Shown: piece by piece, positions 13,494 through 63,201 of the stretch
How the letters are laid out: the number at the start of each line of letters is the position of its first letter
Position numbering within the stretch: the first letter of the stretch is position 1
Virus record (IMG/VR): IMGVR_UViG_3300021440_000013
Location: 124,001-188,000 of that record
Direction: 5' to 3' (one strand)
DNA: 64,000 nt
Made by a program: the position numbers and the translations under genes
Notes under the pieces: model-generated
What the model saw: only the letters and a program-made list of their open reading frames with translations
Told to the model about the DNA's origin: nothing
Databases searched by the model: none

Positions 13494-13750
13494 TTAAAGT
13501 ATAGATGTAGTGGAAGATCGACCAAAAATCGAAACTAGGCATTCTATCGAAAGTTAGACACGTGTAAGTTCACCCTATGGCAATAAGCCGCTTTACTTAC
13601 ATCGCATTGTTTAAACTAACGAGGATTGACCTACATGGTTGTAAGGTGGAGCCGTGTTCATAAAGTCCATCTAAAGATTCTTTTAATTAGGTGGTTGGGA
13701 AGCTCTTTTTTAGCCGCCTGTCGCTGTTTTCTCTCTCAAAGGAAGAACTC

Positions 13751-39367: not shown

Positions 39368-39389
39368 TCTTTTCTCCAATCATTAAAAC

Positions 39390-39420
39390 CGTGAGGAGGG
39401 GTCTAAAACCCCTCCTCACG
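39390..39420. terminator. Intergenic hairpin
   Basis: CGTGAGGAGGGG...CCCCTCCTCACG. Confidence 0.6.
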
Positions 39421-39427
39421 TGCTCGT

Positions 39428-42400: not shown

Positions 42401-45400
42401 ACCCGCTAAACCCATCACGCCGCCAAGACCTTTAGTGATCAAGGAGAAGAGTCCACCAAAGCCCGTCATCGCCATTTTGAGGCCATTTCCAAGCAAATCC
42501 ATCAGTCCTGTACCGCCCTTATAGCGTGCGGTCAGATCTGCTTGAGCGCCTTCTTTTTGGCGAGATGCTTTGAGTTCAGCTAACTTTTCTTCACGCTCTT
42601 CAATACTTCCGTCACGTGTACCACTTCCATCGGTGTCGTTCCAAGCACGCTTGGCCGAATCGATCTTTTGCTTAACACGTTTAAGAAGAGAAGGTTTCTT
42701 TTCAACTTGAGGTTGATTTTCGGGTGTGGCTGCCGCAGCACCTTTTTCTCCACCCTTTAAAAACCCGCCAATACTACTTGCAAGTCCACCCGCCATAGCG
42801 GCACCGGTCCCTAATAGACCGCGTGCCTTACCCTGCGCTAACTTAAAGCGACTTGGTTTGGCAGGACCCATCTGGTCTGGAAGTCTAGGCCCCACGAAAT
42901 CACCTGGACTCTGAGCCTTAGGGGTCGACCAACTCGGTTGCTTGAATCGATCCTTGGCAGCTTGAATCATCGCATCGATACGGTCCTGATACGTCTCGTT
43001 GGGTTGTAAGTCCGATATCCCTCTGTCAATCGCATCTTTTTGTCGAGCACCGGGATATATCGGTCCAACAAACTCATCTGGTCTCTGGGTCTTGGTAGCG
43101 GTGTGTTTTGTTTTTAGCGCGCTGTACTGGTATTTGGCTTTATTGAACAAGCCTTTCTTTTTGTCACCCGGCTGCATCGGACCCACAAAGTCTTCCGGTG
43201 TTCTACCCAAAAGCTTGTCTCCGAGTTCGCGTCCCTTGCCTTTTAGGTCAGTGAAGTTTTCTTTATTCTTAAAGAAATCCATTCCACGAGAGAGAAGTGA
43301 GCCTGAGCTTGTTCCGATTGCAGCAGTGCTGACTCCAGGCTGCATCGGACCCACAAAGTCCTTTGCGACCTCTTCACTGACAGCACCACCTTTACCAAAA
43401 CCAAAGAAACCCTTGATCTTGTTCTTGAGCTCTGCGGTCTTTTCTTTGATCTCAGCCGACTTGATGGCTACTTCGTCCTTAGCTTCCTTTAAAACCTCGT
43501 TCAGGTTCTTAGGCGCTTTGTCGACAGGACCGCCAGGCGGCGTTACCTTGAGCTTGGCAGATTCACGCTTCTTAATGCGTTTTAACACATTCACACGCTG
43601 GTTAAGCATGATGTCGCGGATATCGAGCAAGACCTCGTAAGTATCCTTGGCGTATTTATTTTCACCAAAGTTGATACCAAACTGACCCCAGTCGGTGGGT
43701 TGATCCCACCACTCTTTGATCTTTCCACCCATTGAGAGCGACTTATCGGTCAGGACATTAAATCCTTTTCTAGCTTTATCTCCTACCCACGCAGCCGCCT
43801 TGGTCGCTAGACGGATGACGTTGGTGACGTTTCCACGGATCTTATCACCATAGCGATCATAGAGACCCTTGGAGCGTTCTTCAAGACTCAGGATGATGTT
43901 ACCCACCGAGTCAACGATATCGCCCTTAGCCTTATTGAGCTTATCCATCGTGTCAAGCACTTCGCCCGTGACCGCGTCACGATAAAAACCCGCCTTGAGT
44001 TTAACGGCACGAATAACGGGTTCTACGCCATCAGGCAAGTACAGGTCTTTGGCTTCATTAAGCTTATCCCCAACCCAACCAAAGACTTTACTCACCTTGT
44101 CTTTGATGAACTTTAAACCATTGGGAAGTCCTTCGGTTAGAAAAGACTTCGCGCTATCGAAGACGGTGCTTGAAAAAGATGCTGCTTTTTCATAGAGCGT
44201 GCTAAACGCTTTACGCGTACCGCTCTCTTTATCGGTGAGTTGGTCTTTAAGAAAGTCTTTTGCTGAGGTGAAAAGACCCTTGGCTTTCTCGGTTTTCTCA
44301 CCCGGTGTAAAGAATTCTTTAAGCGCCTCGATTGTGCTTGAACCGGCTTTAAATCCTAGGTCCATCGTGCCGCGCATGATCGAAGTAATCATGCCGCGGA
44401 AAGTGCCATCGTGAACAAGTTGGTTTGGAATAAAGCCACCCGCACCCTGGCCACCGCTTTGCACAAGCTCACTGGCCAGCTTTTGCTGTTCGGTAAGCAG
44501 CTTTACCGTGTCAGCGGTATCTTTTTGGATCTTAGCGAGGAGCTCGTTGGTGAGCTCCTCTGCGCTCTTACCCTTGGTACGGTGACGTGAAGAGCTCTTG
44601 GGTGTGGTTTCCGGCGGTGCGGCGTCACGTTTAAAAAGACCTTCGACCTTCTCACCCAAATGTTGAATGGAAGCCATCAAGGCGCCATTCATACTTTGCA
44701 GATCGATCATCTTGCCCTTTGGTGCAACCTCTTCACCTAGGTTCTTACGCACCTCCTGAGCCATGGGTCCTGAGTGCTCTTGATCATCGCCCTTACCCGC
44801 CTGATAGTTCCAGTTAAAGAGCTTGGTCTTTTTAATACCTTCGTAGGCTTCCCTTGGATTAAAACGCTTAACCTTGTCAAAGAAACCCTCTTCTTTGTCG
44901 GGTTTAGACTTCTGTCCAAAGTAGCGTGCCGCCAAGTCTTTATAATCCTGACTCCCAGGCGCACCCTTAAAGCGATCACTGACCGCCTGGAGGAGTTCTT
45001 TTGGGTTAAGCTCTTTGATCGCTTCTTTAACGTTGATGTCCGAACGAATAAAGGCGCTGTCTTCCATGAACTTGGCGTAAGCTTCTTCATCGATGTCGTA
45101 CTTGCCGTCATCACGCTTTTTCGCTAAACCTTTCTTAGCGATTAGATCGCCATAGCCCGCCTTTTCAAACCCAGCGATGGTTTTATCAGACGAAGGTGTC
45201 CTCTTACGGATGTCCTTGATGGCTTTAGTCAGTGTGTTAGCATCGCGGTTTTTAGTATCGCTTTGCTCGCTTGAGCGAAGCTTATATTCAATTAAGTCTT
45301 GGAGTTCATCTGAGAGCTGTCCGAACGAAGGGGACGAGAGGATCGAATCAGGATCAAGTGGGTTATTACTATCCCGACTCAGCCTTGATAAGAATCGTTT

Positions 45401-47038: not shown

Positions 47039-47089
47039 TTTTAGATAGCCTCCCATAATGTAAAGTTTAGCATCCAAAGGATCTTCGCT

Positions 47090-49116
47090 ATGAACCTTTT
47101 AGATACGGTCCCATTTAACCTGAGTCTTCTAATTCTCACGCCCGAGAATACACGTGGACTTGGGCAAGTCAAAGTGCTCGATGTTTTCTCAGCGGCCAGT
47201 AAGAACTTTCACAGTGACGGTCTTTTTAGTATCGAGACCTTTGGTAAGGTAGGGGGTGAACGCCGTAGCCGCCTCTATGGTTACATTAACCTTAATGTGC
47301 CAATCTTTCACCCTGTGCTCTATAAGAGCTTGATTGGGCTAAAGGAGCTCTACGCGCAGATCATGGCGGGTTCTGCCTACGCCAAATTTGATCCAGTAAC
47401 AAAAGACTTTGAAGCAGCCTCAATCACCGACGGTGAAACAGGCTACGCGTTCTTTGTCAGGCATTTCCAAGCGCTTCAGTTTGAGGAGCGTAAAAGTACG
47501 TCGCGTGAGTTCGCGATCAAGCTCATTAATAAATACCGCGATAAGGCTTTTATTGATAAACTCATTGTGCTTCCTGCTGGATTACGTGACTACACGATCC
47601 AGCCCAACGGTAAGCCTGAGGAAGATGAGATCAATACCCTGTATCGCAAGGTGCTCTCCAATGCTACGGTCATTGGGACTCAGTCAAAGAGCGATCTGAC
47701 CCATATTGACTCAACCCGTTATGGGCTTCAGAATGCGGTACAGGAGGTCTTTAGTTACATCGTGAACTTGCTTGAGGGGAAGGGTAAGTTGATCCAAGGC
47801 TGGTGGACTAACCGAAACGTTCACAACAGCACACGCAATGTGATCACAGCGATCGTCCCCAAGTCTAATGAACTGGGGGACGAACACACCATTTCCCCAA
47901 ACCACACCGTCGTGGGGATCTATCAGCAGATTCGTGCGATTTTTCCGATCTCGATCAATCTGATCCGTGAGATGGCGGGTATGGTTTTTTCAGGTCCTAA
48001 TAACCCAGCGCGGCTAATCGATCCAAAAACACTTCTAGGTGAGACGGTCTCGATTGATCCGGTTCATTTTGATGAGTGGATGACCCAGGAAGGGATCGAG
48101 TCCATTTTAAACCGTTTTGAGATCGAGGCGCTTCGACACGACGAAGTTAAGGTGGGTGGACATTACTTCGCTCTGCTTTACAATGACGGTAAACGCGTCA
48201 AACTCTTTCACGGCTTGCAAGAGCTGCCAGATGGGTTTGACAAGGCATTCGTTAAACCGGTTAGCTATGCAGAGCTGTTCTACTTAGCGGTCTATAAACG
48301 TGTCAGGGAGATCCCTGCGTTTGTGACACGTTACCCCGTGATCGGCTATGGTGGTATCTACCCAAGCTTCGTCTATATGAAAACGACCACGCACAGTCAA
48401 TCTTTGCGTGTTTTAGATGACGCGTGGCAAGAAAGTGGCGATGTCGCTAATGAGTTCCCAATTCGCGGTGTACCTTTCGTTAATTCACTGAGTGTCTCCG
48501 GAGCCCACTTAGGCCGGCTCGGGGCTGATTGACAACGAGTGTAATAATTGATGCTAGAGTTTAGCATCTCGTTGTTTGTCCGATTTTGTAGAAATGCAAA
48601 ATTGATCCTCCTTTAACTGCTGGAACCCACTAAAGCTGTGTCACCACATGCGTCACGAAAGTAGACGTAGACGGTTTAAAAACGACATGGATGATCCGAT
48701 TGACTCGGTGAAATGGGGAACCGTGGAGTGAAACACTCCCTTTAGCAGCCAAGCTCCTAAGGCGTAAGCTATGGAGAAGGTTCAACGATCAGCCCTTAAG
48801 CAAGGGGTAGGCTCAAGCGAGCCGAAACGGGGAGCACCTGACCGGTTGATGCCGAAGGTGAAGATATGATCTGTTCTGCATGCAAAACATGCAGCGTATG
48901 CGGGTAATGCTGCGGGGAGAAGGGTAGCGTCTTTTCTTGAACAACAAGTTCGACGGGGATGTCATGTCGTTTGTACCGGTGATGACCGATGAGTCTATCG
49001 CAGAAGTTACGAAACTCTTGGCCAGTCGCGACTACTATGTGGGTGTCGATGGCAAGATGGTATTTAGCTCTTCTAACGATGTCTCTGAGTTGGTTTTCTC
49101 AGAGATGACCAGTTAA
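47090..49116 (+). CDS. Virion RNA polymerase beta' subunit (phiKZ gp180-like); spliced join(47090..48529,48949..49116), 535 aa
   Basis: DGLFSIETFG, LPAGLR, LEGKGKLIQ, TRYP motifs. Catalytic LGAD|FDGD is restored by removing the intron. Exon 2 = FDGDVMSFVPVMTDESIAEV...EMTS*. Confidence 0.9.
48530..48948 (+). ncRNA. Group I self-splicing intron (419 nt, no homing endonuclease ORF)
   Basis: 5' exon ends in U and intron ends in G. P AACTGCTGGAAC (48615), Q TAGCAGCCAAG (48743), R GTTCAACGATCA (48780), S AAGATATGATCT (48861). P2 with GAAA loop, P9 hairpin, P9.0 TGTTC/GAACA. Confidence 0.92.
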
Positions 49117-49665: not shown

Positions 49666-52600
49666 ATGAAACCTATTTTTAAGGTACTTTATCGGGCAGA
49701 GGGTATTCGCTACAGCGATCGGCTTTTGAACCTCCCGCAGTATAAGCTGACGCAGTTTCCACGAGGGTCTCTTTTTCACAGCGTCGATTACACGCATCTA
49801 CACCCAGACGTAGAGGCTGCTCAGCCCTATTTCACGGGTTATAGCAAGAAGATCTTGGTTGATCATCTTACGCACTATGAGGCTCTTAAAGGCCCCGCTC
49901 GCCAAATCACCTTCAACATCAATCAAGCCACACGGACGTGGCGTCAAAGCCACCGTGCTCTCTGGAGTGAGCTTGAAGCGCCGTATCGTACAGAGCAAAA
50001 TCCTGACGCACTCATTGTCGTAAACTACGGTTATCTGGACAAAGCCCACATTTACCAAAAGGTGCAGTTGGCAGAATATTACCGCTGGTACAATCTCTTT
50101 GATACGCTTTACCGAAAAGTCAACGAGATCGCCGCCGTAAGTGATCGTCATCAGTTCTTGTTTTATCCTTTGCCAAAACTATTACAAGGCCGGGCAATCC
50201 TTCAGAAGTTTGAAAAAGAAGGCGAAGGCTCAATTCGAACGGTGTCGTTCTTTGGCCAAGGTGGAGATGCCAGTTATCTCTTTTTGGACCTTTGGAAATG
50301 GTTAGGTGTTAAGCACCGCGCTAATAGCCTTTTATCACATATCTATCCGAAACATTACGCCAAAGTCAACTTGATCTTCCAGGGTAGTTCAGGTAATCAA
50401 GTTTGGATTAACTTGGGGTATCTGAACAGTTGGATCAAGGGTCAAGAAAACGCAACCGAATTTAACAGTGTCACGCAGTTTGATGCGGAGTTGATCCAAA
50501 AACTCTACCTTCGAATGGCGATGAGTTTGAACTCGGTGGTGACTGAGCCTGAAGTGCTGCCCGATGAAGCGGTTGAAATCAACCAAAGTGTCCCTGTGCC
50601 GAAGGTTTCTGAAGAACCTTCGGCAGGTAGCGTTGACGAAACCAGTCTTGACACCGAGAGCGCGGCGCTTCCCAGTGACGAAGAAGAGAACCCCAACGCA
50701 GGACAATCACTCCTTCGAGTCAACCTTAAAGCAGGCGCTAAAACCGAGGTGGCGGCGCTGGATAAAAAGAGCGATGAGCTTCCCGTTGAGGACCTCACCA
50801 AACTCATGCTCGATGAGCTTGAAAAAGACATGGAGGCACTGGATCGCATCAGTCTTGTTCACCTTAAGAATAGTGGTGAAAAAATGGATGCGACAGGCGG
50901 TCCGGCGGTTGAAATCACGCTGGATAGCCGTAGTGTAAGAGAAGAAGTTTATAAGACACTGAGCGCTGAAGAAGCGCTTAAGAGCCGTATCCGTGAAGAC
51001 GCTGAGGCGAATCTCATTACCGCTTCGGATTACCGTAAGTATGAAGAGGCGATCAAAGCGTACCAAGAAAGCCCTGATCCTTACGGTGGAAAAGAGCCGC
51101 GCATTAAAGCGATGGTGATTAAACCCGAAGAACTCATCATCACTCCCGAAGAAAGTAAGATCGTCTTGACGAGCGCAACGCCTGACACCACAATGGGTGA
51201 AAGCACGCTGAAGACGTTCGATAAGAAATACATTCGAACGGTTCACCGTAAGGACATCTTACAAGCGATCGACGCGATCCAAGGAACCGGTGTGGTGATC
51301 CGTAACCACGAGGTGGAAATCCGGCATAGCGTCCTAGGTGTGTATGAGCACCACCGACTTGAAATCAAACCGATCGATGGTGCGCCGTCCACGCTTCAGT
51401 TTACGCTTCCTGTGGTCGAGGAGGACGGCACCTTTACAGCAGGAGGAAACAAATACCTTCTGCGTCGTCAACGGGTCGACAACGTTATTCGTAAGATCGC
51501 GCCTCAGATCGTCTCGCTCTCGACCTATTACGGTAAGACGTTTATTCAAACGTCGCCTAAGATGTCAAGCAGCAGTCTAGTCTGGCTCTTTAGACAGATT
51601 AACCTACAGGCGCTCTCGGGTGAAGGCCTTATCAGAGACGTTAACCCAGGCAATGCGTTTGATAACGATTACACCGCACCGTACATCTATAACGCACTTG
51701 CCAGTGAGTTTGAATCGATGAGCGTCGGAGACATTAAGCTCATCTTCGATCACAAAGCCGCAAGGAAGCTTCTTAACGAAGGCCAAGGGTATCCGCGATC
51801 TTTGTTTGCAGATGGGGCTGTGTTTTGCGGTGTGGACAGCAAGGGGAATTATATCCGGGTTGACCGCGATAATCACTTTCAGCGCTTTAGTGACAAAGGG
51901 GTGGAGGAGCTCGGTGATTTTGCCAGCTTGGCTAAGCTGGATGTCGAAAAAGCACCGATCGATTTTGCTGAGATGCGGGTGTTTTCCAAGTATGTGCCTG
52001 TGGGGCTCATCCTTGGCTACTATGTGGGCTTTAAACGCCTTATCGCGCTTCTGGACGAGCCGTACCGTGTGGTTGAGGGGCGTAAGAATAAAGGCTTGGC
52101 GCCTAACGAATACGCGGTAAGTTTCCAGGATGTGAGCTACATCTTTAAAACGACAGACCGCGTTAGCACACTGATCCTCTCAGGCTTTATGGAGTATGAA
52201 AAGATCATCAAGATGTTTGAGGCTAAGGAGTTTGACCATAAAGAAGTCTATCTCAACGTCTTAATGGCGAAGAAGATGAGTGCCATCTATGTGCGTGAGC
52301 TCGACATGATGGAGTCGGCCTTTATTGATCCGATTAGTCGTGAGATCTTGGCTGAGATGAAAGAGCCGACCAGCTTTATTCCGCTGCTGGTAAGAGCCGT
52401 AGAACTCCTCACTACGTTTGAACACCCTGCATCGCAAGACCGCTCTGCTATGCGTGACCGGGGCTATGAGCGTTTTGCAGGCACGATCTACAAAGAACTG
52501 ACCCAGGCGGTTCGGCAGTTTAGGAATAAGAATCTCGTAGGGCGCTCTAAGGTCGATATGAGTCCGTTCCAGATCTGGAACGCCTTAATGAAGGACAATT

Positions 52601-54027
52601 CCTTAAAGATCGTTGAGGACACCAACCCGATCCAGAGTTTAAAAGAACAGGAGGTCATCACCTTTACCGGCACAGGAGGTCGTAATAAAGACACGATGAC
52701 CAAAGAGACGCGCGCGTATCACCCGAACGATGTGGGTATTCTGTCTGAGTCGACTGTCGACAGCACCTCTGTGGGGACCATCGCGTACCTCTCTGCAAAC
52801 CCGAACATCAAAAATGTTCGGGGTATCGCAAAAGATGAGAAGGTCTTTAACCCGACGACGATCCTCTCAACCAGCGCACTTTTATCACCCGCCGCAATGA
52901 ACGACAATCCCAAGCGTGTTATGTTTATCACCACGCAGCATTCGCATACGATCGGCTCAAGTGGCTATAAGCAACCTCGACTCCGAACAGGGTATGAGTT
53001 TGTGATTGGGAAACGGACTCCGAAGCTCTTCTCTAGCGCGGCTGAAGAAGACGGTGTTGTGCTGAGTATTGCGGAAAAAGGCATGGTGGTGCGTTATGCC
53101 TCAGGTAAAGAAGTAGGTCTTGAATTAGGTCGACTTCACGGTAAAGCAGAAGGAACGGTGTACCCTCATGATCTCGTCACCTCTTTAGCAGTCGGTGCTA
53201 AGTTTAAAGCAGGCGATATTCTTAGCTATAACACCAAGTTCTTTGAGCCTGATTTTATAAACCCCAAAGAAGTGGTGCTAAAAGTGAACGATGTCGTCAG
53301 AACCGCGTTCATGGAAAACAACTTAACACATGAAGACTCGTGCTCGATTTCTCAGAGCCTGGGTAAGCGTTTTGAAACCGAGGTGATGAAGGTTAAGTCA
53401 TACGTGGTGAAGTTCCAACAAAACCTTCTCGAAGTCATTAAGCTGGGTGCTCGGGTAGACCCAAAGACCGTCTTGATGATCATTGAGGATGAGATCACCG
53501 CGAACACCGGTGCGTTTAGCGAAGACAGCTTAGCGACACTTAAACGCCTTTCAAATGCTGCGCCTAAGGCTGGCGTGATGGGTATCGTTGAAAAGATCGA
53601 AGTGTTCTATCATGGCGACAAACGTGACATGACGGCGTCGATCAAAAAGCTCGCCGATAAATCCGATCAAGACATGGCTCAAGCGGCTAAGAGTGTCGGT
53701 AAGCCCGTTGTTTCGGGGCGTGTTACCGACGAATATCGCGTGGCGGGTTCTCCGCTTGAACTCGATTACGCTGAAGTGAAAATCTACATCTCCGTTAAAG
53801 CGGGTACGGGCGTAGGTGATAAAGCGGTCTTTGGTCATCAGATGAAGTCGACGATCGCCGAAGTGATGGCCGAACCGATCCATACCGAAGCGGGTGAGAT
53901 CGTAGAGGCGACGTTTGGTTACCGCTCTGTGGCTAACCGCGGTGTTCTCTCTCCTTCAATCATTGGCACCACCATCACGCTTCTGGATGTGGTGGGTAAG
54001 AAAGCGGTTGAGCTTTACGAAGCATAA
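49666..54027 (+). CDS. Virion RNA polymerase beta subunit, large fragment (phiKZ gp178-like)
   Basis: 1453 aa; TFTGTGGR, LSESTVDS..VG, HEDS, GVGDK...HQMKST beta motifs. Confidence 0.9.
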   Translation: MKPIFKVLYRAEGIRYSDRLLNLPQYKLTQFPRGSLFHSVDYTHLHPDVEAAQPYFTGYSKKILVDHLTHYEALKGPARQITFNINQATRTWRQSHRALWSELEAPYRTEQNPDALIVVNYGYLDKAHIYQKVQLAEYYRWYNLFDTLYRKVNEIAAVSDRHQFLFYPLPKLLQGRAILQKFEKEGEGSIRTVSFFGQGGDASYLFLDLWKWLGVKHRANSLLSHIYPKHYAKVNLIFQGSSGNQVWINLGYLNSWIKGQENATEFNSVTQFDAELIQKLYLRMAMSLNSVVTEPEVLPDEAVEINQSVPVPKVSEEPSAGSVDETSLDTESAALPSDEEENPNAGQSLLRVNLKAGAKTEVAALDKKSDELPVEDLTKLMLDELEKDMEALDRISLVHLKNSGEKMDATGGPAVEITLDSRSVREEVYKTLSAEEALKSRIREDAEANLITASDYRKYEEAIKAYQESPDPYGGKEPRIKAMVIKPEELIITPEESKIVLTSATPDTTMGESTLKTFDKKYIRTVHRKDILQAIDAIQGTGVVIRNHEVEIRHSVLGVYEHHRLEIKPIDGAPSTLQFTLPVVEEDGTFTAGGNKYLLRRQRVDNVIRKIAPQIVSLSTYYGKTFIQTSPKMSSSSLVWLFRQINLQALSGEGLIRDVNPGNAFDNDYTAPYIYNALASEFESMSVGDIKLIFDHKAARKLLNEGQGYPRSLFADGAVFCGVDSKGNYIRVDRDNHFQRFSDKGVEELGDFASLAKLDVEKAPIDFAEMRVFSKYVPVGLILGYYVGFKRLIALLDEPYRVVEGRKNKGLAPNEYAVSFQDVSYIFKTTDRVSTLILSGFMEYEKIIKMFEAKEFDHKEVYLNVLMAKKMSAIYVRELDMMESAFIDPISREILAEMKEPTSFIPLLVRAVELLTTFEHPASQDRSAMRDRGYERFAGTIYKELTQAVRQFRNKNLVGRSKVDMSPFQIWNALMKDNSLKIVEDTNPIQSLKEQEVITFTGTGGRNKDTMTKETRAYHPNDVGILSESTVDSTSVGTIAYLSANPNIKNVRGIAKDEKVFNPTTILSTSALLSPAAMNDNPKRVMFITTQHSHTIGSSGYKQPRLRTGYEFVIGKRTPKLFSSAAEEDGVVLSIAEKGMVVRYASGKEVGLELGRLHGKAEGTVYPHDLVTSLAVGAKFKAGDILSYNTKFFEPDFINPKEVVLKVNDVVRTAFMENNLTHEDSCSISQSLGKRFETEVMKVKSYVVKFQQNLLEVIKLGARVDPKTVLMIIEDEITANTGAFSEDSLATLKRLSNAAPKAGVMGIVEKIEVFYHGDKRDMTASIKKLADKSDQDMAQAAKSVGKPVVSGRVTDEYRVAGSPLELDYAEVKIYISVKAGTGVGDKAVFGHQMKSTIAEVMAEPIHTEAGEIVEATFGYRSVANRGVLSPSIIGTTITLLDVVGKKAVELYEA

Positions 54028-56586: not shown

Positions 56587-57354
56587 ATGATGAACGGAAA
56601 AGTTTACTTCACGGCAACGAAGTTGTCGATCTTTAAAAAGGAAGGTAAGTTACTTCCTGATGAAAACGGCTACTACGAACTGGTGGTAGGTGGGCTTAAT
56701 ACCTACAACAACACTGGGGCGTGGTATTACACCATCGAGGGCGTGCGGGAACTCTTTGGTCCAGGCAGCATCTTGCACCGACGTATCGCCAATGGTTGTC
56801 TTAGGGCGGAAGTGAATCACCCTAAGCAAAAGCCAGGTGAGTCCGCCGAAGCATTCTTTAATCGGATGCTTGACATCGATCTCAATAACACCTGCGCTCA
56901 CTTTAAGGAAATCTGGCTTGATGAGGAGTTCGGTAAGAAGAACCCTCAGTACAAGAACCCGAACCTGGTGGCGATCATGGCGAAGGTGAAGCCAGCGGGC
57001 CCCAAGGGCCAGATGCTTCAAGAATCGCTTGATAACCCCAGTGAGAATGTCTGCTTCAGTATCCGTGCTCTGGCTGATGAGGGCTATGTTGGTGGTAAGC
57101 GTCTGAGGGTATTAAAGGAAGTCGTCACCATCGATTACGTCAATGAAGGTGGAATCGTGGTCGCCTCCAAGTGGGATTCTCCCGCCATGGAAAGCATCGA
57201 TGACAGCGCACTTCTTGAGATCACACTTAAGACCATTGAGAAAGCTAAGGTAGGTGAATCATGTCTTGCTACCGAGGCTTCTCGTGAACTCGTTGAGTAT
57301 GTAGAAAAGAAGTATTTCAAAGCGACAAAACCCGCGGTCTGGGCAAACTGGTGA
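56587..57354 (+). CDS. Prohead (head maturation) protease (phiKZ gp175-like)
   Basis: His RAEVNHP, Ser CFSIRA, Asp TIDYV; C-terminal self-cleavage-type sites AME and ATE. Confidence 0.85.
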   Translation: MMNGKVYFTATKLSIFKKEGKLLPDENGYYELVVGGLNTYNNTGAWYYTIEGVRELFGPGSILHRRIANGCLRAEVNHPKQKPGESAEAFFNRMLDIDLNNTCAHFKEIWLDEEFGKKNPQYKNPNLVAIMAKVKPAGPKGQMLQESLDNPSENVCFSIRALADEGYVGGKRLRVLKEVVTIDYVNEGGIVVASKWDSPAMESIDDSALLEITLKTIEKAKVGESCLATEASRELVEYVEKKYFKATKPAVWANW

Positions 57355-57420: not shown

Positions 57421-57822
57421 ATGAGTGCGCTCACGATTGTTCGTGTTAATGCGCTTCCGCTCCAAACGGAAGCGAACACGCTCTATCTCGTAAAGAAAAC
57501 GGATACCTTATTCGATCTTTACGTCACAAGTTCTGACGGACTCTCTGTTCGTCACGTTGCAACCCAAGAAGACGTTCTTACCCAAAGCGTTCTCTTTTCT
57601 CAAACGCCACCTGCTCTTCCACAGGCTTCCCGTTTGTGGTGGAACACGGTCGAAGGTGTTCTTTACATTCAGTACGATGATGGCGATAGCGTAAACTGGG
57701 TTGAAGCTAATCCTGCTCCTCTTTACCCGGAATTTGGTGGTACGGGCTCATCGAACACGATGGCGCGTGCTGATCACAACCACGACGAGACGTATGTCAC
57801 GATCGGCATCCATCAGTGGTGA
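57421..57822 (+). CDS. Small fibre-related protein
   Basis: N-terminus matches the 13751 protein; LWWNT..G.LY..YDDGDS..WV and ARADHNH fibre motifs; ends GIHQW. Confidence 0.65.
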   Translation: MSALTIVRVNALPLQTEANTLYLVKKTDTLFDLYVTSSDGLSVRHVATQEDVLTQSVLFSQTPPALPQASRLWWNTVEGVLYIQYDDGDSVNWVEANPAPLYPEFGGTGSSNTMARADHNHDETYVTIGIHQW

Positions 57823-57828
57823 TCAAAG

Positions 57829-58950
57829 ATGCTTAAATTTCCAGTTTCCCCCATTGAAGGTCAGATCTACACGTACGACAATGTGCGTAAGTACATTTAT
57901 TCGGCAGGGCGTTGGAAGGTCTACTCTAACAACTACGTCTTGGCGGTGGAAAACGTTAACTTTGCCAATGAGCCCTATGTAGACGCTAAGGTGGGTGCCG
58001 AAGCACAGCGGGCTAACCAAGCCATTGCTGAAGGCGATACGGCAACGCTAACCAGTGCCAAAGCCTATGCCGACACTAAGATTGTCAACGACCCGAGTGT
58101 TTATGAGGCGTTGATTTCTCAAGGTGACGCTGCTACACTGGCGAGCGCTAATGCTCACTCAGATACGCAAGCGGCCAATGCACTTCAAGCGGCCCAAACC
58201 TACTCGGATGCCCTGGTTGCGGGTCAAGACATCAAGAAATCGGTCACGGTTGCAACGACGCAGAACATCGCTTTGTCTGGTGTGCAAACGATCGACGGCT
58301 ACGCGTTGTCTGTCGGCAACACGGTCTTGGTTAAAGACCAGGCCAACGGCGCACAAAACGGCATTTATGTCGTGGCTGCCGGTGCGTGGGCGCGCAGAAA
58401 TGATGCCGACACCTCTGACAAAGTCACCACGGGTCTTACTGTCACCTCTGAGCAAGGCAGCAGCAATCATGACACCACCTGGGTCCTCACGACCAAGGAT
58501 GTCGTGCTTGGCACTTCACCCCTCTCCTTTACGATCTTTGGCTCGTCGGTCTCGGTTGACAACATCACTTTGCGTAAAACCGACAACGTTGTGTCGGTGA
58601 GTCCTTCGGTTACACCGTACGACATCGGTGCGTATGTGAATGGTAAGCCTAACGCGGCGGATGTCATCACGCGCATCATTTGTGTTCGGCCCTTCAATCT
58701 TCCGGCTAACCTAACGGGTAGTCACGCCAACGCAAGTACCCCGCCCAGTTTTCCCGCTGTCTTTACCATCAAGAAAAACGGAGTTTCGATCGGGTCGTTC
58801 CAGTTTGCGGCAGGCGCCGGTAGCGCTTCATTTACTTTTGCTGCCCCGGTTTTCTTTGCCACAAACGATCTGATCACCGTCCACTCTCCTGACACACAAG
58901 ACGCTACCCTTGCGGATATCGCCTTTACGTTCATGGGGAATCTTCAGTAA
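57829..58950 (+). CDS. Fibre/tail protein
   Basis: FPVSP..GQIY N-terminus; GDTATLTSAKAYAD coiled coil; VATTQNIALSGVQTIDG...VLVKDQ...QNGIY domain; C-terminal beta-sandwich. Confidence 0.75.
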   Translation: MLKFPVSPIEGQIYTYDNVRKYIYSAGRWKVYSNNYVLAVENVNFANEPYVDAKVGAEAQRANQAIAEGDTATLTSAKAYADTKIVNDPSVYEALISQGDAATLASANAHSDTQAANALQAAQTYSDALVAGQDIKKSVTVATTQNIALSGVQTIDGYALSVGNTVLVKDQANGAQNGIYVVAAGAWARRNDADTSDKVTTGLTVTSEQGSSNHDTTWVLTTKDVVLGTSPLSFTIFGSSVSVDNITLRKTDNVVSVSPSVTPYDIGAYVNGKPNAADVITRIICVRPFNLPANLTGSHANASTPPSFPAVFTIKKNGVSIGSFQFAAGAGSASFTFAAPVFFATNDLITVHSPDTQDATLADIAFTFMGNLQ

Positions 58951-58959
58951 GGGGGAGGT

Positions 58960-59376
58960 ATGCTCTTTGGAAACTCAAAGCTCGCCAATAGTCTTCTAAA
59001 CGCCATCTTAACGGAAGGTGCTTTGTCGACGATGGGTCAGTGCTCCATCTTGGTGTATAAAAACACCATCCCGACTGATCAAGCAGCACTTAGTTTCGAT
59101 CCAGCAACACGAAGCGCCGATCTCCTGGGCACGTTTACGAACTCTACGTTCAGTGTTACGGGTAACGCCATCTCACTTAAACAGCCGCCCAGCGCCATCA
59201 CGACGCCTGTGGCCGGCACGGTGACATGGGCGTATATCAAAGGTGCTAATAGCGTTGGCTTTATTGTGGATGTGGGGTTGGCTGGAAGCTACTCGCCGCT
59301 TATCTTAGACAAGCTTGTTTGTACTGCGGGTGGATCTCTAACCGTGGTTGAAGCGGGCATGAGTCTTGTGTTCTAA
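58960..59376 (+). CDS. Small virion protein, paralog type A1
   Basis: PTD...AGTVTW...IVDV. Confidence 0.7.
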   Translation: MLFGNSKLANSLLNAILTEGALSTMGQCSILVYKNTIPTDQAALSFDPATRSADLLGTFTNSTFSVTGNAISLKQPPSAITTPVAGTVTWAYIKGANSVGFIVDVGLAGSYSPLILDKLVCTAGGSLTVVEAGMSLVF

Positions 59377-59390
59377 GAAGGAGATGTGCT

Positions 59391-59843
59391 ATGTCAGTGA
59401 TAAAGATAACGGGGTTGTCTAGCGCACTTTTGAATAGTGCGCTCAGACAAAGTCTGGGGATAAACGTGAACGGCTATGCTGCGTTTACGGGCATCTACCA
59501 AGGCAGCCCGCCCAACATTGTCGATGTGGTTAACAACGTCACCACCTTTAGGGCGAGTGACCTACTCTGGTCTTCTGAGGGCAGCGCTAACACTGTTCTG
59601 CCGCTTGGCTACCAGTTGAATGGTGATGGTTTTTTTTACCCGAAGAAACCCGGTATCGCCGGATGGTTTCTTTGTGCGGGGATTGATAAAGCGACGCGCA
59701 ACATCATGTCGTTTATCACTGGGCGTGTTTCTGAAAGCGGTGGTGATGGGGATCTTATACTTTCGAGCACAACACTCGAAAGTAATAATAAGTATCGTAT
59801 CCATCAACTCAAACTCAATATCCCGTACTCCTTTACCTACTAG
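59391..59843 (+). CDS. Small virion protein, paralog type B1
   Basis: IYQGSPP...FRASDLL...GIAGWF...GGDGDL...YR. Confidence 0.7.
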   Translation: MSVIKITGLSSALLNSALRQSLGINVNGYAAFTGIYQGSPPNIVDVVNNVTTFRASDLLWSSEGSANTVLPLGYQLNGDGFFYPKKPGIAGWFLCAGIDKATRNIMSFITGRVSESGGDGDLILSSTTLESNNKYRIHQLKLNIPYSFTY

Positions 59844-59855
59844 GGGGTGTTTTTA

Positions 59856-60317
59856 ATGGCAGTGATTTCAAAATCGCTAACCGCCGCGTACCTCATATCG
59901 CTTAGAAATAAGCTTTTGTTTCCGGTTAATGCGGCGGGTATTAAGCTGTGTATTGGGGAGATGCCGACAGACGCTGAGATTGAAACCCTCACTCAGTCAA
60001 GTAGCCGCATCACCGACAATGTCGCAGTGACGATCAACACCACGGGCCTCACCTCGAAGTTAAAGGATACGGCGTGGCCGCCCACTTACGCTTCGGACAC
60101 ACTTCCAAGTAACCCCAAGGCGTTGTCTACCAAAGTTGGAAAAATTGGATGGTGTGTTTTTTACCACACCAACCCCAGCGTGGTAGTTATCGGTGACGTC
60201 ACGTTAACGAACGGCACCGGACTTGTTAGTGTCGATGCGCTTGACGTGGTTGTAGGCACGCCTGTTACTCTTACCAACATCGCCATTCAGGTTAAGAGGT
60301 GGAACAGTGAAGCTTAA
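59856..60317 (+). CDS. Small virion protein, paralog type A2
   Basis: LCIGEMPTDAE...DVTLTNGTG...VGTPVTLTN. Confidence 0.7.
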   Translation: MAVISKSLTAAYLISLRNKLLFPVNAAGIKLCIGEMPTDAEIETLTQSSSRITDNVAVTINTTGLTSKLKDTAWPPTYASDTLPSNPKALSTKVGKIGWCVFYHTNPSVVVIGDVTLTNGTGLVSVDALDVVVGTPVTLTNIAIQVKRWNSEA

Positions 60318-60903
60318 ATATAATACCGCAGCTTTTACGGATTTACTCACCTATGCAACTGAAGGGGGTGAGGTCAGTGTGGCGGGAGTTCCTGCGAAAT
60401 ATTTCTGTGGACTTAACGGAGGTTTCTATATCGGAACCAACGGCACGGCTGTGGGTTTTGTTAAATCACTTATCGGAACCGGATGGGGTTGGATAACCTC
60501 GGTACGGGGTCTTTGGATCTATAAAGGTGTCCCACCCACGCTCGGTGAACTTGAAACGTACATCGCAGCGGCGCCAGTGAAAGTGACAGCGACGGACATC
60601 TTCCGGTATAGCGACCTTCTTATCAAATACACACCCCTTACGCAGTCTGTTACAAACACGTCGCTGATTCATAGTTTTAGTCCAAGCACAGCGACAGCAT
60701 CAGGCCAAGCATCGTGGTTTATTATCGGTGTCTATGCTGATAATTCGAGCGGTGTTGCTCTTCCCTCATATCTGATCATGGGTACCATAACGGAAAGTGC
60801 GGGGGGTGGCGACATTGAACTGGCTGATTTAAATATCGTCTCCGGCACGCAGTACCGCCTTCCTCCCTACGAACTTAAATTCCCTTCTAAACTCTCAAGC
60901 TAA
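60307..60903 (+). CDS. Small virion protein, paralog type B2
   Basis: RGLWIYKGVPPT...FRYSDLL...ASWFIIG...GGGDI...YRLP. Confidence 0.7.
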   Translation: MKLKYNTAAFTDLLTYATEGGEVSVAGVPAKYFCGLNGGFYIGTNGTAVGFVKSLIGTGWGWITSVRGLWIYKGVPPTLGELETYIAAAPVKVTATDIFRYSDLLIKYTPLTQSVTNTSLIHSFSPSTATASGQASWFIIGVYADNSSGVALPSYLIMGTITESAGGGDIELADLNIVSGTQYRLPPYELKFPSKLSS

Positions 60904-60918
60904 CAAAGGAAGTAAAAA

Positions 60919-61362
60919 ATGATCACCTCTAAAGGCATGGCCTGCTCGCTGCTTCAGTCGTACCTGATGTCTCTTCGCACCGTTCAAAGTGCATCAGGGC
61001 TTCTTTTGTGTGTCGGAACGCCTCCGACTGACGCCGAAGTCGATACGCTGACCGCTGCTTCCACGATCGTCACGAGTAATCTGGCATGCACGTTCGATAT
61101 GACCGGGTTTACCTATGCGCTTAACAACACTACGGAGTTTCCGCCACGTTATGTGCTCTCGGGCTATCCCTACACCAACACAAAAACTTCCGCCAAAGCC
61201 GGCACGATCACCTGGGGTGTCCTCTCAAATGCGGCATGGGGTATTGCAGTGATTGACGTCACGCCTACTAATGGCGGCGGCATCGTCGAAATCAACACTC
61301 CGACTGTCATCGTAGGTACGCCGGTCACGCTCACCAACTGGTCGGTTAAGATCGATCGTTAA
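60919..61362 (+). CDS. Small virion protein, paralog type A3
   Basis: LCVGTPPTDAE...AGTITW...DVTPTNGGG...VGTPVTLTN. Confidence 0.7.
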   Translation: MITSKGMACSLLQSYLMSLRTVQSASGLLLCVGTPPTDAEVDTLTAASTIVTSNLACTFDMTGFTYALNNTTEFPPRYVLSGYPYTNTKTSAKAGTITWGVLSNAAWGIAVIDVTPTNGGGIVEINTPTVIVGTPVTLTNWSVKIDR

Positions 61363-61381
61363 TCTTTTTAAGGAGAAATAT

Positions 61382-61912
61382 ATGTCTGCTCGTTTTCCTC
61401 TTGCTACGTTGAACTACCTGCTCCGTACTGCGGGCGCTCCTTCTTCCACGATGGGGGGTCTTGCAGCGCCGTCTAAGGGCGTCAATAGCGACATCATCCG
61501 GATTTATAATGCGGCAGTCCCGGTGCGTGGTCTCTTTATCTTCAAAGGCGTTCCGCCCACTAAAACGGAGCTTGATGCTATCGACAACACCGTCTATACG
61601 ACGGTTGCCACTTCGTTCCGTTACGCTGACCTGCTGCTTCAGTTTGCACCAAGTGTTGCACCCCAGTACGTTGAGGATAAAGCGCTCTTTTCGATGCCGC
61701 CGGCTACGCCGATTCGCTCGGGTACGGCCTCGTGGTTTATCTTCGGTGCCTTTAATAACAGTGGCGTCACGGAAACCCACTCATACATCATGGGTACTGT
61801 GGCAATGGACGGAAGTGGCGATCTGAACATCCTTGACACCAATATCGATTCGACGAAGCTGTATCGATTCCCTCAGTTTGCGTTCCAGGCTCCGAAGAAG
61901 TTTGTCTTTTAA
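61382..61912 (+). CDS. Small virion protein, paralog type B3
   Basis: RGLFIFKGVPPT...FRYADLL...ASWFIFG...GSGDL...YRFP. Confidence 0.7.
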   Translation: MSARFPLATLNYLLRTAGAPSSTMGGLAAPSKGVNSDIIRIYNAAVPVRGLFIFKGVPPTKTELDAIDNTVYTTVATSFRYADLLLQFAPSVAPQYVEDKALFSMPPATPIRSGTASWFIFGAFNNSGVTETHSYIMGTVAMDGSGDLNILDTNIDSTKLYRFPQFAFQAPKKFVF

Positions 61913-61935
61913 CCTAAACCACTGAGGTGATCTGT

Positions 61936-63147
61936 ATGCCACTCATCACAGTGGTGCCACAGAGTCGATATAAAACAATCGACTTAATAAACCAGGGTGA
62001 GATAACACTCACCCCTTCGTTTACTAACTACCGCTATACCAACCTGTTTCCTGTGTCGCTCTCCAAAGACGCAGTGGTAAACTATCTGGCGTTAAATAGC
62101 CAAGACACACTGGTTAAAAACGTCAGTATGGGTTCGGGCAGCAGTTATAGCCTAGGTAGTGATATTGCCACGCTTTCGAGCTTAGCAACACTACGTAATG
62201 GTGATGTCTTTACCCAGTCGAGTGAGATCGTTCTCAATAAACCCAGTGCGCTGATGGGAAATGCCGATGTGTTTAGTTTTACAAACGACATCGTTCTCAA
62301 TAAATCAAACGCAATCATGGGGGGTGGAGGTGTTTTTAATCTTACCAGCGACATAACGCCAGGATCTCCATTTGTGGTCTCAGGGGGTGCGGGAGAGTAC
62401 AGTCTTTCGTCACCTGGGATAGCGGTTGCGCCTGCGGTCTTGATGGACGATGCACCCACGTCGTATCCGGCTGATCGAGACACCACTGATCCGTATCTTT
62501 ACACCAACAACGTTCTTTTGACTGACTTTGAAGGTGCGAACGGAAGCACAAGTCTCACTGATGCGTATGGAAAGTTATTTTCCAATAGGACTGGCTTTAG
62601 CCTAAGCACAACCAAATCAAAGTTTGGCTCGAGTAGTGGGTACTTTAACGGCGCCACCTATCTTGAAACTCCGCAATCAGCACAAGACTATGCTTTTGGA
62701 GTCGGGGATTTTACCATCGAGTTCTGGTTTAACACCCCGGCATTACCTGCGTCTGTAGCATGCTTAGTCGATGCGCGAGACGACAGAACCGGAACGAACG
62801 GCTTTTTTGCATACTACCAGTCTAATGGTGTATTCGGTGTATCAGTCGATGGTGGCGCTACTGTTTATCCCACCGCTATTATTACGGCTAATAAATGGTA
62901 CCACCTCGCGGTGGTGAGAAACGGAGGGGTTTTACACACATATATTAACGGCAATTCGATTGGGTCTATTGAGTATAAATCCAACATGACAGCGCGATCG
63001 ATGGTGTTTGGAACAGTAATGACCATCAAGACCGGAGGGAGCGGCTGGGAGTTCTACGGCTACATGGATGCACTGCGTGTTACCAAGGGCGTTGCGCGCT
63101 ATGTTCATGCGTTCACGCCACCGACGGTTCCATATCCACTTCCTTAA
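61936..63147 (+). CDS. LamG/concanavalin-A-like lectin domain tail protein
   Basis: SKFGSSSGYFNG, GDFTIEFWF, WYHLAVVRNGG...YING, GYMDALRVTKGVARY; short internal repeats (IVLNK..A.MG). Confidence 0.85.
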   Translation: MPLITVVPQSRYKTIDLINQGEITLTPSFTNYRYTNLFPVSLSKDAVVNYLALNSQDTLVKNVSMGSGSSYSLGSDIATLSSLATLRNGDVFTQSSEIVLNKPSALMGNADVFSFTNDIVLNKSNAIMGGGGVFNLTSDITPGSPFVVSGGAGEYSLSSPGIAVAPAVLMDDAPTSYPADRDTTDPYLYTNNVLLTDFEGANGSTSLTDAYGKLFSNRTGFSLSTTKSKFGSSSGYFNGATYLETPQSAQDYAFGVGDFTIEFWFNTPALPASVACLVDARDDRTGTNGFFAYYQSNGVFGVSVDGGATVYPTAIITANKWYHLAVVRNGGVLHTYINGNSIGSIEYKSNMTARSMVFGTVMTIKTGGSGWEFYGYMDALRVTKGVARYVHAFTPPTVPYPLP

Positions 63148-63169: not shown

Positions 63170-63201
63170 CAGACAGGAGGGCCGCAAAGCCCTCCTGTCT
63201 G
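63170..63201. terminator. Intergenic hairpin
   Basis: CAGACAGGAGGGC...GCCCTCCTGTCTG, T-rich stretch nearby. Confidence 0.65.

What the first reader, a model, noticed from the sequence alone, without database searches (positions are those of the whole stretch)
58960..61912. Six paralogous small virion proteins in a strict A-B-A-B-A-B array
Seen: the genes at 58960, 59856 and 60919 share PTD(AE)...G-x-x-x-W...DV motifs (type A; A1 is the most diverged). The genes at 59391, 60307 and 61382 share I(Y/F)xGxPP...FRxxDLL...A(S/G)WF...GxGD...YR motifs (type B). A and B look distantly related to each other. The array is flanked by a fibre gene and a LamG lectin gene. Inference: an A-B gene pair was triplicated and diverged, suggesting obligate heterodimers that build a segmented fibre or whisker, or a hetero-hexameric ring, capped by the lectin protein. 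This may be an uncharacterised modular appendage.
Basis: partly seen in the sequence, partly recalled or inferred. Interest (0 to 1): 0.62.

Follow-up and report, generated by a model that had tools for sequence, protein, structure and literature searches.

The report
Bead proteins of a chain-like fibre
Six small neighbouring genes of a phiKZ-like jumbo phage are real paralogues in strict A-B-A-B-A-B order, and they belong to a recently solved family of small dimer-forming "bead" or "garland" proteins of phage tail fibres, so this is a new variant of a known appendage, not an unknown one.

Summary
Six genes (58960-61912) form two subfamilies, A1-A3 and B1-B3. These are separated by a starred tree branch and are themselves homologous (hhalign 96%, E 1.8e-9). 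Four other metagenomic jumbo-phage contigs carry the same six genes in the same order, each with a one-to-one orthologue. Shorter contigs show the same A/B alternation and two natural A-B fusions.

The family is not uncharacterised. A family profile hits the garland proteins of Agrobacterium phages 7-7-1 (gp014, PDB 9RKV) and Milano (gp125, gp127). It also hits fibre protein gp40 of Pseudomonas phage A1002 (PDB 44NX). The B3 model matches 9RKV chain A at Z 9.2. In those phages such proteins form dimers. The dimers are threaded on an extended "rope" chain or wreathed around fibre tips.

My reading is that the six proteins are beads of such a fibre, encoded in one operon with a fibre gene and a LamG protein. 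The LamG protein's conserved N-terminus has 21-residue repeats and no confident fold, which makes it the likely rope.

Whether the beads are three A:B heterodimers or six homodimers is open, because the complex predictor was unavailable. I rate this a new variant of a known kind, of moderate interest.

The parts
57421..57822 (+). First gene of the operon: 133-aa protein with a short tail-fibre-type C-terminal motif.
   Evidence: PHROG phrog_3304 (L-shaped tail fibre assembly) 1.1e-6 and phrog_9729 (tail fibre) 6.2e-6 over residues 55-100. It lies 6 nt upstream of the fibre gene. It is not conserved in relative L004.
57829..58950 (+). Fibre protein, 373 aa, with alanine-rich N-terminal repeats and conserved middle and C-terminal domains.
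   Evidence: PHROGs annotated tail fibre (phrog_11518, 6e-35; phrog_7049, 3e-18) and head decoration (phrog_2647, 3e-25). It is 48% identical to the 618-aa gene at the same position in L004. Its middle domain matches PDB 9nx3_A, 'capsid decoration protein', at 2.6e-8.
58960..59376 (+). A1, 138 aa, the most diverged A-type bead protein.
   Evidence: Family profile 5.9e-16; phrog_3758 3.2e-4 over its full length; orthologues 45-51% identical in four relatives.
59391..59843 (+). B1, 150 aa, B-type bead protein.
   Evidence: Family profile 1.3e-29; 28% identical to B3 at 5e-9; orthologues 39-45% identical.
59856..60317 (+). A2, 153 aa, A-type bead protein (an alternative GTG start lies at 59847).
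   Evidence: 42% identical to A3 at 1e-31; family profile 1.6e-21; orthologues 48-62% identical.
60307..60903 (+). B2, 198 aa, B-type bead protein with a longer N-terminal extension. Its GTG start overlaps the end of A2 by 11 nt.
   Evidence: 42% identical to B3 at 2e-26; family profile 3.3e-41. The A2-B2 gap is -11 to +3 nt in all five genomes.
60919..61362 (+). A3, 147 aa, A-type bead protein.
   Evidence: Family profile 1.2e-24; orthologues 55-63% identical.
61382..61912 (+). B3, 176 aa, B-type bead protein. This is the one that was modelled.
   Evidence: AlphaFold2 model with pLDDT 83.7 and pTM 0.77. Foldseek to 9rkv_A gives 6.9e-5. VIA-align gives Z 9.2, rmsd 4.0, 124 residues aligned, with the next hit at Z 5.0.
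61936..63147 (+). LamG (concanavalin-like lectin) protein, 403 aa. It has an N-terminal module of about 180 aa followed by one LamG domain. It is a putative receptor binder and a candidate 'rope'.
   Evidence: Pfam Laminin_G_3 1.8e-17 over residues 242-386. The N-terminal module is conserved in proteins of 1031-1297 aa that carry several LamG domains. In the model, residues 1-203 have pLDDT below 50.
62131..62448 (+). Five tandem 21-residue repeats (residues 66-171 of the LamG protein). These are candidate docking sites for bead dimers.
   Evidence: Self-similarity peaks at period 21 in the window protein and in the L004 protein. Each repeat is predicted as short beta strands.
63170..63201 (+). 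Strong intrinsic-terminator-like hairpin that closes the operon.
   Evidence: 13-bp stem with 9 G-C pairs, followed by a T-rich tail.

Best explanation
The six genes encode the small 'bead' subunits of a chain-like or garland-type accessory fibre of the phage's receptor-binding apparatus.

Shown:
- They belong to the same sequence family as the garland proteins of Agrobacterium phages 7-7-1 and Milano, and as fibre protein gp40 of Pseudomonas phage A1002.
- B3 has the fold of 7-7-1 gp014.
- The six genes lie in one operon between a fibre gene and a LamG protein gene.
- The six-gene order is fixed in five genomes.

Inferred by analogy with the solved structures:
- The proteins dimerise.
- The dimers are strung by beta-sheet augmentation on an extended chain.
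- The most likely chain is the N-terminal module of about 180 residues of the downstream LamG protein, which has 21-residue repeats and no confident fold of its own.
- The result would be a segmented fibre whose far end carries the lectin domain that contacts host surface sugars.

I slightly favour three A:B heterodimers (about even odds) over six homodimers laid down in gene order.
For: Family.
- Profile A5 against PDB sequences: 44nx_B at 2e-10 and 9rkv_A at 2.1e-7.
- The 9rkv_A sequence is that of 7-7-1 gp014. The 44nx_B sequence is that of the 147-aa fibre I protein, and equals KPP25 ORF006 over the aligned stretch.
- Per-genome hits: 7-7-1 gp012 at 3.2e-15 and gp014 at 1.7e-9; Milano gp127 at 3.1e-16 and gp125 at 1.8e-11.
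- 113 of 150 family representatives match phrog_3758, 'virion structural protein'.

Fold. The B3 model matches 9rkv_A at Z 9.2, far above the next hit.

Published roles.
- 7-7-1: a garland of 36 gp014 chains in homodimers around the distal fibre domains (PMC12796354).
- Milano: 18 dimers of gp125 and gp127 (PMC10811340).
- A1002: 11 dimers of gp40 and gp41 threaded on the rope part of gp39 by augmented beta sheets. GP4: five dimers on a separate rope protein (PMC13730344).

Synteny.
- In 7-7-1 and Milano the bead genes directly follow the fibre gene.
- In KPP25 the bead genes directly precede the rope gene.
- Here the six genes lie between the fibre gene and the LamG gene.

Operon. Gaps are 6-19 nt and a terminator follows the LamG gene.

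Conservation.
- Five genomes carry A1-B1-A2-B2-A3-B3 followed by the LamG gene. The positional orthologue is the best hit in 120 of 120 comparisons.
- The array is fixed while the fibre length (373 to 618 aa) and the LamG protein length (403 to 1297 aa) vary.

Rope candidate.
- 21-residue periodicity.
- An N-terminal module of 160-180 aa conserved across eight proteins.
- pLDDT below 50 for residues 1-203.

Heterodimer hints.
- Two independent A-to-B fusion proteins exist. Their N halves fall on the A side and their C halves on the B side of the tree.
- B-A-B-A-B arrays occur in L016 and L017.
- A2 and B2 always abut.
Against: - No direct evidence here that the proteins are in the virion, that they dimerise, or that they touch the LamG protein.
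- Most solved homologues are modelled as homodimers, including the two paralogues of A1002. The Milano dimers were left open as homo- and/or heterodimers.
- The rope of the A1002 relative KPP25 shows no sequence periodicity, so repeats are not a signature of ropes.
- The number of clear repeats varies (3 in most relatives, 4 in one, 5 here) while the gene number stays at six.
- The low confidence of the LamG N-terminus may only reflect an alignment of 8 sequences.
- In Milano and 7-7-1 the dimers form a garland around fibre tips with no identified rope.
- The fibre gene also resembles head-decoration proteins, so a tail location is not proven.
- The structural match to GP4 gp80 is only Z 3.6. 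None to A511 gp105 or T4 gp8 rose above noise.
Confidence: 0.6

Rival explanations
1. Six different homodimers, not three heterodimers. Each paralogue forms its own dimer and takes a fixed place along the rope, in gene order, alternating A2-B2-A2-B2-A2-B2. This resembles A1002, where gp40 dimers and gp41 dimers occupy separate stretches of the rope.
For: - Most solved homologues are modelled as homodimers (PMC12796354, PMC13730344).
- A1002 uses two adjacent paralogous genes (147 and 171 aa) as separate homodimers (PMC13730344).
- A1002 spends roughly 24 rope residues per dimer: 268 fibre-dock residues for 11 dimers.
- The LamG stretch from about residue 30 to 175 would therefore hold about six dimers.
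- One-to-one conservation of six distinct paralogues fits six distinct positions.
Against: - Both natural fusions run A to B.
- A-to-B gaps are the shortest ones in L016 and L017, and A2-B2 always abut.
- In L004 three docking repeats are nearly identical, so sequence alone would not address six different dimers.
- Most relatives show only three clear repeats.
Confidence: 0.4
2. A garland rather than a threaded fibre. As in Milano and 7-7-1, the dimers wreathe and cross-link the distal domains of the fibre protein (57829-58950) and of the LamG protein. The LamG N-terminus does not serve as a rope.
For: - The closest sequence and fold match is 7-7-1 gp014, a garland protein.
- The Agrobacterium-phage proteins sit on the A side of the family tree.
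- The bead genes follow the fibre gene exactly as in those phages.
Against: - The Milano authors themselves expect an unidentified 'string' (PMC10811340).
- The LamG N-terminal module is conserved, repetitive and without a confident fold.
- In KPP25 the bead genes lie immediately before the rope gene.
Confidence: 0.25
3. A head-associated rather than tail-associated appendage. The fibre gene and the six proteins form capsid fibres or whiskers.
For: - The fibre protein's middle domain matches a 'capsid decoration protein' (9nx3_A, 2.6e-8) and the head-decoration family phrog_2647.
- The operon starts directly after the prohead protease gene.
- GP4's chain-like fibre docks onto the capsid (PMC13730344).
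Against: - The same domain also occurs in families annotated as tail fibre.
- In L004 and L018 the module lies next to a tail-sheath-like gene, not the protease.
- All solved homologues are anchored on the tail or baseplate.
Confidence: 0.1
4. Non-structural helpers: chaperones or assembly factors for the fibre and the LamG protein that are absent from the finished particle.
For: - Small genes next to fibre genes are often chaperones.
- There is no proteomic evidence for this phage.
Against: - Homologues are seen in cryo-EM maps of virions (9RKV, 44NX).
- 7-7-1 gp014 and gp012 are annotated as virion structural proteins.
- Six conserved distinct paralogues is excessive for a chaperone role.
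Confidence: 0.05

Closest known systems
Garland proteins of Agrobacterium phages 7-7-1 (gp014, PDB 9RKV chain A; paralogue gp012) and Milano (gp125, gp127)
   Same: Same sequence family (profile E 1.7e-9 to 3.1e-16). Same fold for B3 (Z 9.2). About 140 aa. Two paralogues per genome. The genes sit directly after the tail fibre gene.
   Different: They have two paralogues separated by an unrelated gene, not six in strict alternation. They come from 69-kb phages rather than a 217-kb phiKZ-like jumbo phage. No LamG protein follows them. Both paralogues fall together on the A side of the tree, so the B subfamily is not represented there. Their arrangement is a ring-like garland.
Chain-like fibre of Pseudomonas podophage A1002 (gp40 and gp41 dimers on nozzle-rope gp39; PDB 44NX), and the related fibres of GP4 (gp80, PDB 8JOU) and VP1 (gp11)
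   Same: gp40 is a sequence relative (2e-10; KPP25 ORF006 8.8e-13). There are two adjacent small paralogous genes, one short and one with an N-terminal extension, as with A and B. The bead genes lie next to the gene that supplies the rope. The architecture is a segmented fibre.
   Different: These are podophages. The dimers are homodimers, many copies of each. The rope is part of a nozzle protein (A1002) or a separate protein (GP4) and has no lectin domain. gp41 is not detectable by my profiles. The fold match to GP4 gp80 is only Z 3.6.
Baseplate wedge 3 to tail-fibre-network connectors: T4 gp8 and Listeria phage A511 gp105
   Same: According to PMC10811340, the garland proteins share their fold and dimer form. 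In A511 three dimers sit like beads on an extended chain of a wedge protein. That is the same number of dimers as three A:B pairs would give.
   Different: I found no sequence match. The structural matches are only at noise level (6hhk_B Foldseek E 0.62). Those proteins sit at the baseplate end of the fibres.

Membership tests
Garland / chain-like-fibre bead protein family (7-7-1 gp014, Milano gp125 and gp127, A1002 gp40; PHROG phrog_3758) | Significant sequence-profile similarity to solved or published members | tested here: met
   Profile A5 gives 44nx_B 2e-10 and 9rkv_A 2.1e-7. It gives 7-7-1 gp012 and gp014, and Milano gp125 and gp127, at 1.7e-9 to 3.1e-16. All six window genes score 5.9e-16 to 3.3e-41 with the same profile. 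phrog_3758 hits four of the six weakly and 113 of 150 family representatives.
Garland / chain-like-fibre bead protein family | Shared fold (a small, mostly beta domain of about 140 aa) | tested here: met
   The B3 model (pLDDT 83.7) matches 9rkv_A at Z 9.2, rmsd 4.0, 124 of 139 residues, with the next hit at Z 5.0. The A type was not modelled. Its fold is inferred from hhalign of A against B (96.3%).
Garland / chain-like-fibre bead protein family | Forms dimers | not testable with these tools
Natural A-B fusions exist, but a usable alignment for folding them could not be made.
Garland / chain-like-fibre bead protein family | Gene lies next to the tail fibre, receptor-binding or rope gene | tested here: met
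   The window order is fibre gene, six bead genes, LamG gene, in one operon. The same neighbourhood logic holds in 7-7-1, Milano and KPP25.
Garland / chain-like-fibre bead protein family | Present in the mature virion | not testable with these tools
   No proteome or particle is available for this metagenomic phage. Homologues are seen in virion maps (PMC12796354, PMC13730344).
Chain-like fibre (A1002, GP4, VP1 type) | Dimers dock by beta-sheet augmentation on an extended rope chain | not tested
   Only indirect evidence. The LamG N-terminus has 21-residue repeats, is conserved, and has pLDDT below 50. The known rope of KPP25 has no periodicity, so the repeats are not diagnostic.
BW3-tail fibre network connectors (T4 gp8, A511 gp105) | Fold similarity to gp8 or gp105 | tested here: inconclusive
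   6hhk_B reached only Foldseek E 0.62, and phi812 baseplate chains Z 3.2. The link rests on the statement in PMC10811340.

The most novel reading that the evidence does not exclude
This would be the first heteromeric, position-addressed chain-like fibre. Three obligate A:B heterodimers (or six position-specific dimers) would each be encoded by its own gene and each take a defined site on a 21-residue-repeat rope. The rope would be the N-terminus of a LamG lectin protein. The fibre's order would then mirror gene order, and its tip would be a swappable lectin cassette (one to five LamG domains in relatives), in a phiKZ-like jumbo myophage.
Probability: 0.3. Interest if true: 0.65.

Novelty: new variant of a known kind. 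Interest (0 to 1): 0.5.

Why it matters
Chain-like fibres and garlands built from small dimers are a very recent discovery (2023 to 2026). They are known only from a few podophages and two Agrobacterium myophages, and all use one or two bead proteins.

This locus shows the family is large: 1114 cluster representatives at E up to 1e-3. It also shows that one jumbo-phage lineage has fixed a six-paralogue, two-subfamily version next to a lectin protein.

If the beads are heterodimers, or are addressed to fixed positions, the locus gives a tractable system for two questions. One is how order is specified along a beaded fibre. The other is what supplies the 'string' that the Milano study could not identify. 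It would also give a functional label to many 'hypothetical' or 'virion structural' genes of phrog_3758.

Tried and rejected
No binding was tested, and that is no evidence either way.
- Megablast and tblastn of the region, A3 and B3 against the phage collection found nothing.
- The search for related loci in viral contigs found nothing with the protease, the B alignment or the family alignment.
- Folding a natural A-B fusion (P0025) as a stand-in for the dimer was dropped. MAFFT puts all single-domain relatives on one half, which leaves the other half without an alignment.
- P0114 (1840 aa, 15 matched stretches) is a repeat protein that matches only a short motif of the profile. I do not count it as a relative.
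- 7-7-1 gp013 and Milano gp126, the proposed 'string' in Milano, show no similarity to the LamG N-terminal repeats.
- The rope of KPP25 shows no periodicity, so the repeat argument is weaker than it first looked.
- No family member was found in phiKZ, RP12, RSL2, FLC9, PhiEaH1 or AgentSmith. The module is therefore not part of the phiKZ-like core.
- Pfam gave nothing for any of the six.
- The reads tools were not used.
Full report
**Setting**

The window is bases 124001-188000 of a 216,876-bp virus record with direct terminal repeats. It is a phiKZ-like jumbo phage. It encodes:
- split virion-type RNA polymerase beta subunits (43-2022, 47090-48532, 49666-54027);
- a 2548-aa gp181-like tail protein with a transglycosylase domain (39428-47077, minus strand);
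- a phiKZ-type head maturation protease (56587-57354).

The nearest cultured phages by the protease are only 36-45% identical: Bacillus phage AgentSmith, Burkholderia phage FLC9 and Ralstonia phage RP12.

Six ORFs lie on the + strand from 58960 to 61912. Each has a Shine-Dalgarno-like sequence, and the gaps run from -11 to +19 nt.

All-against-all BLAST gives:

| Pair | Identity | E-value |
|---|---|---|
| A2-A3 | 42% | 1e-31 |
| B2-B3 | 42% | 2e-26 |
| B1-B3 | 28% | 5e-9 |
| B1-B2 | 25% | 4e-7 |
| A1-A3 | 27% | 0.045 |

Profile-profile comparison shows that A and B are homologous (hhalign 96.3%, E 1.8e-9, 116 columns).

A maximum-likelihood tree of the six genes and their six orthologues from a relative splits A from B with support 98/99. 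A 52-row tree that includes distant relatives keeps the split (99/89, starred). It also shows A1 and B1 outside well-supported A2+A3 and B2+B3 clades (both 100/99). That congruence is what duplication of an A-B unit predicts.

The whole genome holds exactly six members of the family.

**The array is old and fixed**

A word search with B3 led to a 214-kb contig (L004). A search with the N-terminus of its LamG protein led to three more contigs (L018, L019, L020). All four carry A1-B1-A2-B2-A3-B3 followed by a LamG protein.
- Orthologues are 39-66% identical on average, and the positional orthologue is the best hit in 120 of 120 comparisons.
- The gene number stays at six while the upstream fibre protein varies from 373 to 618 aa and the LamG protein from 403 to 1297 aa.
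- More distant short contigs show B-A-B-A-B (L016, L017) and A?-B-[A-B fusion] (L010).
- Two natural fusion proteins (P0025 of 300 aa; P0092 of 326 aa) have an A-side N half and a B-side C half.

**What the family is**

Pfam finds nothing for any of the six. PHROG phrog_3758, 'virion structural protein', hits A1, B2 and A3 weakly, and B1 more weakly still.

A profile of 23 A and B sequences, searched against 1.84 billion representatives, found 1114 proteins at E up to 1e-3 and 221 at up to 1e-10. Most are 130-220 aa long. Of 150 of these, 113 match phrog_3758 and 35 match phrog_17152.

An AlphaFold2 model of B3, built on that alignment, has pLDDT 83.7. Its only clear structural match is chain A of PDB 9RKV, 'Agrobacterium phage 7-7-1 tail fibers':
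- Foldseek E 6.9e-5;
- VIA-align Z 9.2, rmsd 4.0 A, 124 residues aligned, with the next best hit at Z 5.0.

The family profile also finds two solved chains by sequence alone: 44nx_B (2e-10) and 9rkv_A (2.1e-7).
- The sequence of 9rkv_A is that of 7-7-1 gp014.
- The profile further hits 7-7-1 gp012 and Milano gp125 and gp127.
- 44nx_B is the 147-aa fibre I protein gp40 of Pseudomonas podophage A1002. It is identical over the aligned stretch to ORF006 of the related phage KPP25.

**What these relatives do (from the papers)**

- *Milano.* Eighteen homo- and/or heterodimers of gp125 and gp127 (about 30% identical) do the same. The authors note a fold like T4 gp8 and A511 gp105. In A511 three such dimers sit like beads on an extended chain of a wedge protein. 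The authors could not identify the 'string' in Milano (PMC10811340).
- *A1002.* Each of six chain-like fibres consists of 11 dimers: seven of gp40 and four of gp41. These two proteins are 16% identical and share the fold. Each dimer forms an augmented beta sheet with the rope-like fibre-dock domain of gp39. In GP4, five dimers are strung on a separately encoded rope protein (PMC13730344).

**Anatomy of the locus**

Genes 57421-57822 (133 aa), 57829-58950 (fibre, 373 aa), the six bead genes and the LamG gene are packed with gaps of 6-19 nt. A 13-bp G+C-rich hairpin with a T tail follows at 63170-63201. This looks like one operon.

The LamG gene should start at ATG 61936. The resulting N-terminus (MPLI..VPQ) is conserved in all relatives, and a GAGGTG lies just upstream.

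Its first 160-180 residues form a module conserved in eight proteins that otherwise differ in size three-fold. The module holds 21-residue repeats:
- five clear ones here (residues 66-171);
- three nearly identical ones in L004;
- three or four in the others, plus degenerate units upstream.

An AlphaFold2 model of the whole protein gives pLDDT below 50 for residues 1-203, with one or two short strands per repeat. The LamG domain reaches 60-79. That alignment had only 8 rows, so this is weak evidence.

In KPP25 the two bead genes lie immediately upstream of the rope gene, the same order as here. A1002 uses about 24 rope residues per dimer (268 fibre-dock residues for 11 dimers), which is close to the 21-residue period.

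I therefore propose that the LamG N-terminus is the rope. This is inference. The known rope of KPP25 has no sequence periodicity. The repeat count does not track the constant gene number.

**Heterodimers or homodimers**

| For A:B pairs | For homodimers |
|---|---|
| Deep, conserved A/B split | Most solved relatives are modelled as homodimers, including the two-paralogue fibre of A1002 (Milano left open) |
| Equal numbers and strict alternation in at least seven contigs | The rope module is long enough for about six dimers |
| Two A-to-B fusions | |
| A2-B2 gap of -11 to +3 nt in all five genomes, and 2-3-nt A-to-B gaps in L016 and L017 | |

I put the two at about even odds.

**Where on the virion**

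The tail is more likely. All solved relatives are on tails or baseplates, and in L004 the module lies next to a tail-sheath-like gene. However, the fibre protein's middle domain also occurs in head-decoration proteins, and in this genome the operon follows the prohead protease. A head fibre is therefore not excluded.

**Distribution**

The same profile that finds the family in this genome, 7-7-1, Milano, Yoloswag and KPP25 finds nothing in phiKZ, RP12, RSL2, FLC9, PhiEaH1 or AgentSmith. The module is an accessory of this lineage and not part of the phiKZ-like core.

**Verdict**

This is a new variant of a known kind: six paralogues, two subfamilies, a jumbo myophage, and a lectin-tipped putative rope. 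Interest is moderate. It would be higher if heteromeric or position-addressed assembly is shown.

Noticed in passing
window 61927-61936: The mechanical ORF for the LamG protein starts at GTG 61927. The conserved N-terminus of all relatives (MPLI..VPQ) and a GAGGTG just upstream point to ATG 61936 as the real start.
   Followed up: yes
window 57829-58950: The 'fibre' protein's middle domain (residues 138-247) matches a solved 'capsid decoration protein' (PDB 9nx3_A, 2.6e-8), and matches PHROGs annotated both as tail fibre and as head decoration. Its N-terminal alanine-rich repeats differ in number between relatives (373 against 618 aa).
   Followed up: partly
window 13691-15034: This stretch has G+C 0.56 against about 0.48 elsewhere. 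Long ORFs lie on both strands (447 aa on +, 429 aa on -). The + ORF hits only phrog_7946 (unknown function) at its C-terminus.
   Followed up: partly
window 39428-47077 (minus strand): A 2548-aa protein: phrog_3201 'tail fibre protein' at 6e-188, plus transglycosylase and endolysin-like domains near the C-terminus. It is probably the counterpart of the giant phiKZ tail-lysin/tape-measure-like protein. It is the only long minus-strand gene in this part of the window.
   Followed up: no
window 43-2022, 47090-48532, 49666-54027: Three genes for split multisubunit RNA polymerase beta-type subunits (phrog_3015, phrog_2986, phrog_3148). These mark the phage as phiKZ-like.
   Followed up: partly
L010 818-1720; L011 356-1336: Two metagenomic genes encode natural fusions of an A-type and a B-type domain in one protein (300 and 326 aa). 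The contigs are short (3.4 and 1.9 kb), so an assembly or frameshift artefact cannot be excluded.
   Followed up: partly
P0081 (312 aa) and P0150 (205 aa): Some family members carry long Thr/Pro/Gly/Asp-rich low-complexity tails after the bead domain. This suggests a mucin-like or linker extension in other lineages.
   Followed up: no
L015 (Erwinia phage Yoloswag, record 38965-41002): The cultured jumbo phage Yoloswag has two family members (gp70, gp72), annotated as hypothetical and separated by one gene. The structure-based search also listed further Yoloswag and Alexandra proteins. These would be accessible laboratory models.
   Followed up: partly
L004 13682-16691; L018-L020, downstream of the LamG gene: In the relatives the LamG gene is followed by a conserved set of small genes and a 352-358-aa protein with an endolysin-type match (phrog_669, 4.6e-12 in L004) and a weak LysC hit. 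In the window the LamG gene is instead followed by a terminator and two small genes (65 and 80 aa).
   Followed up: no
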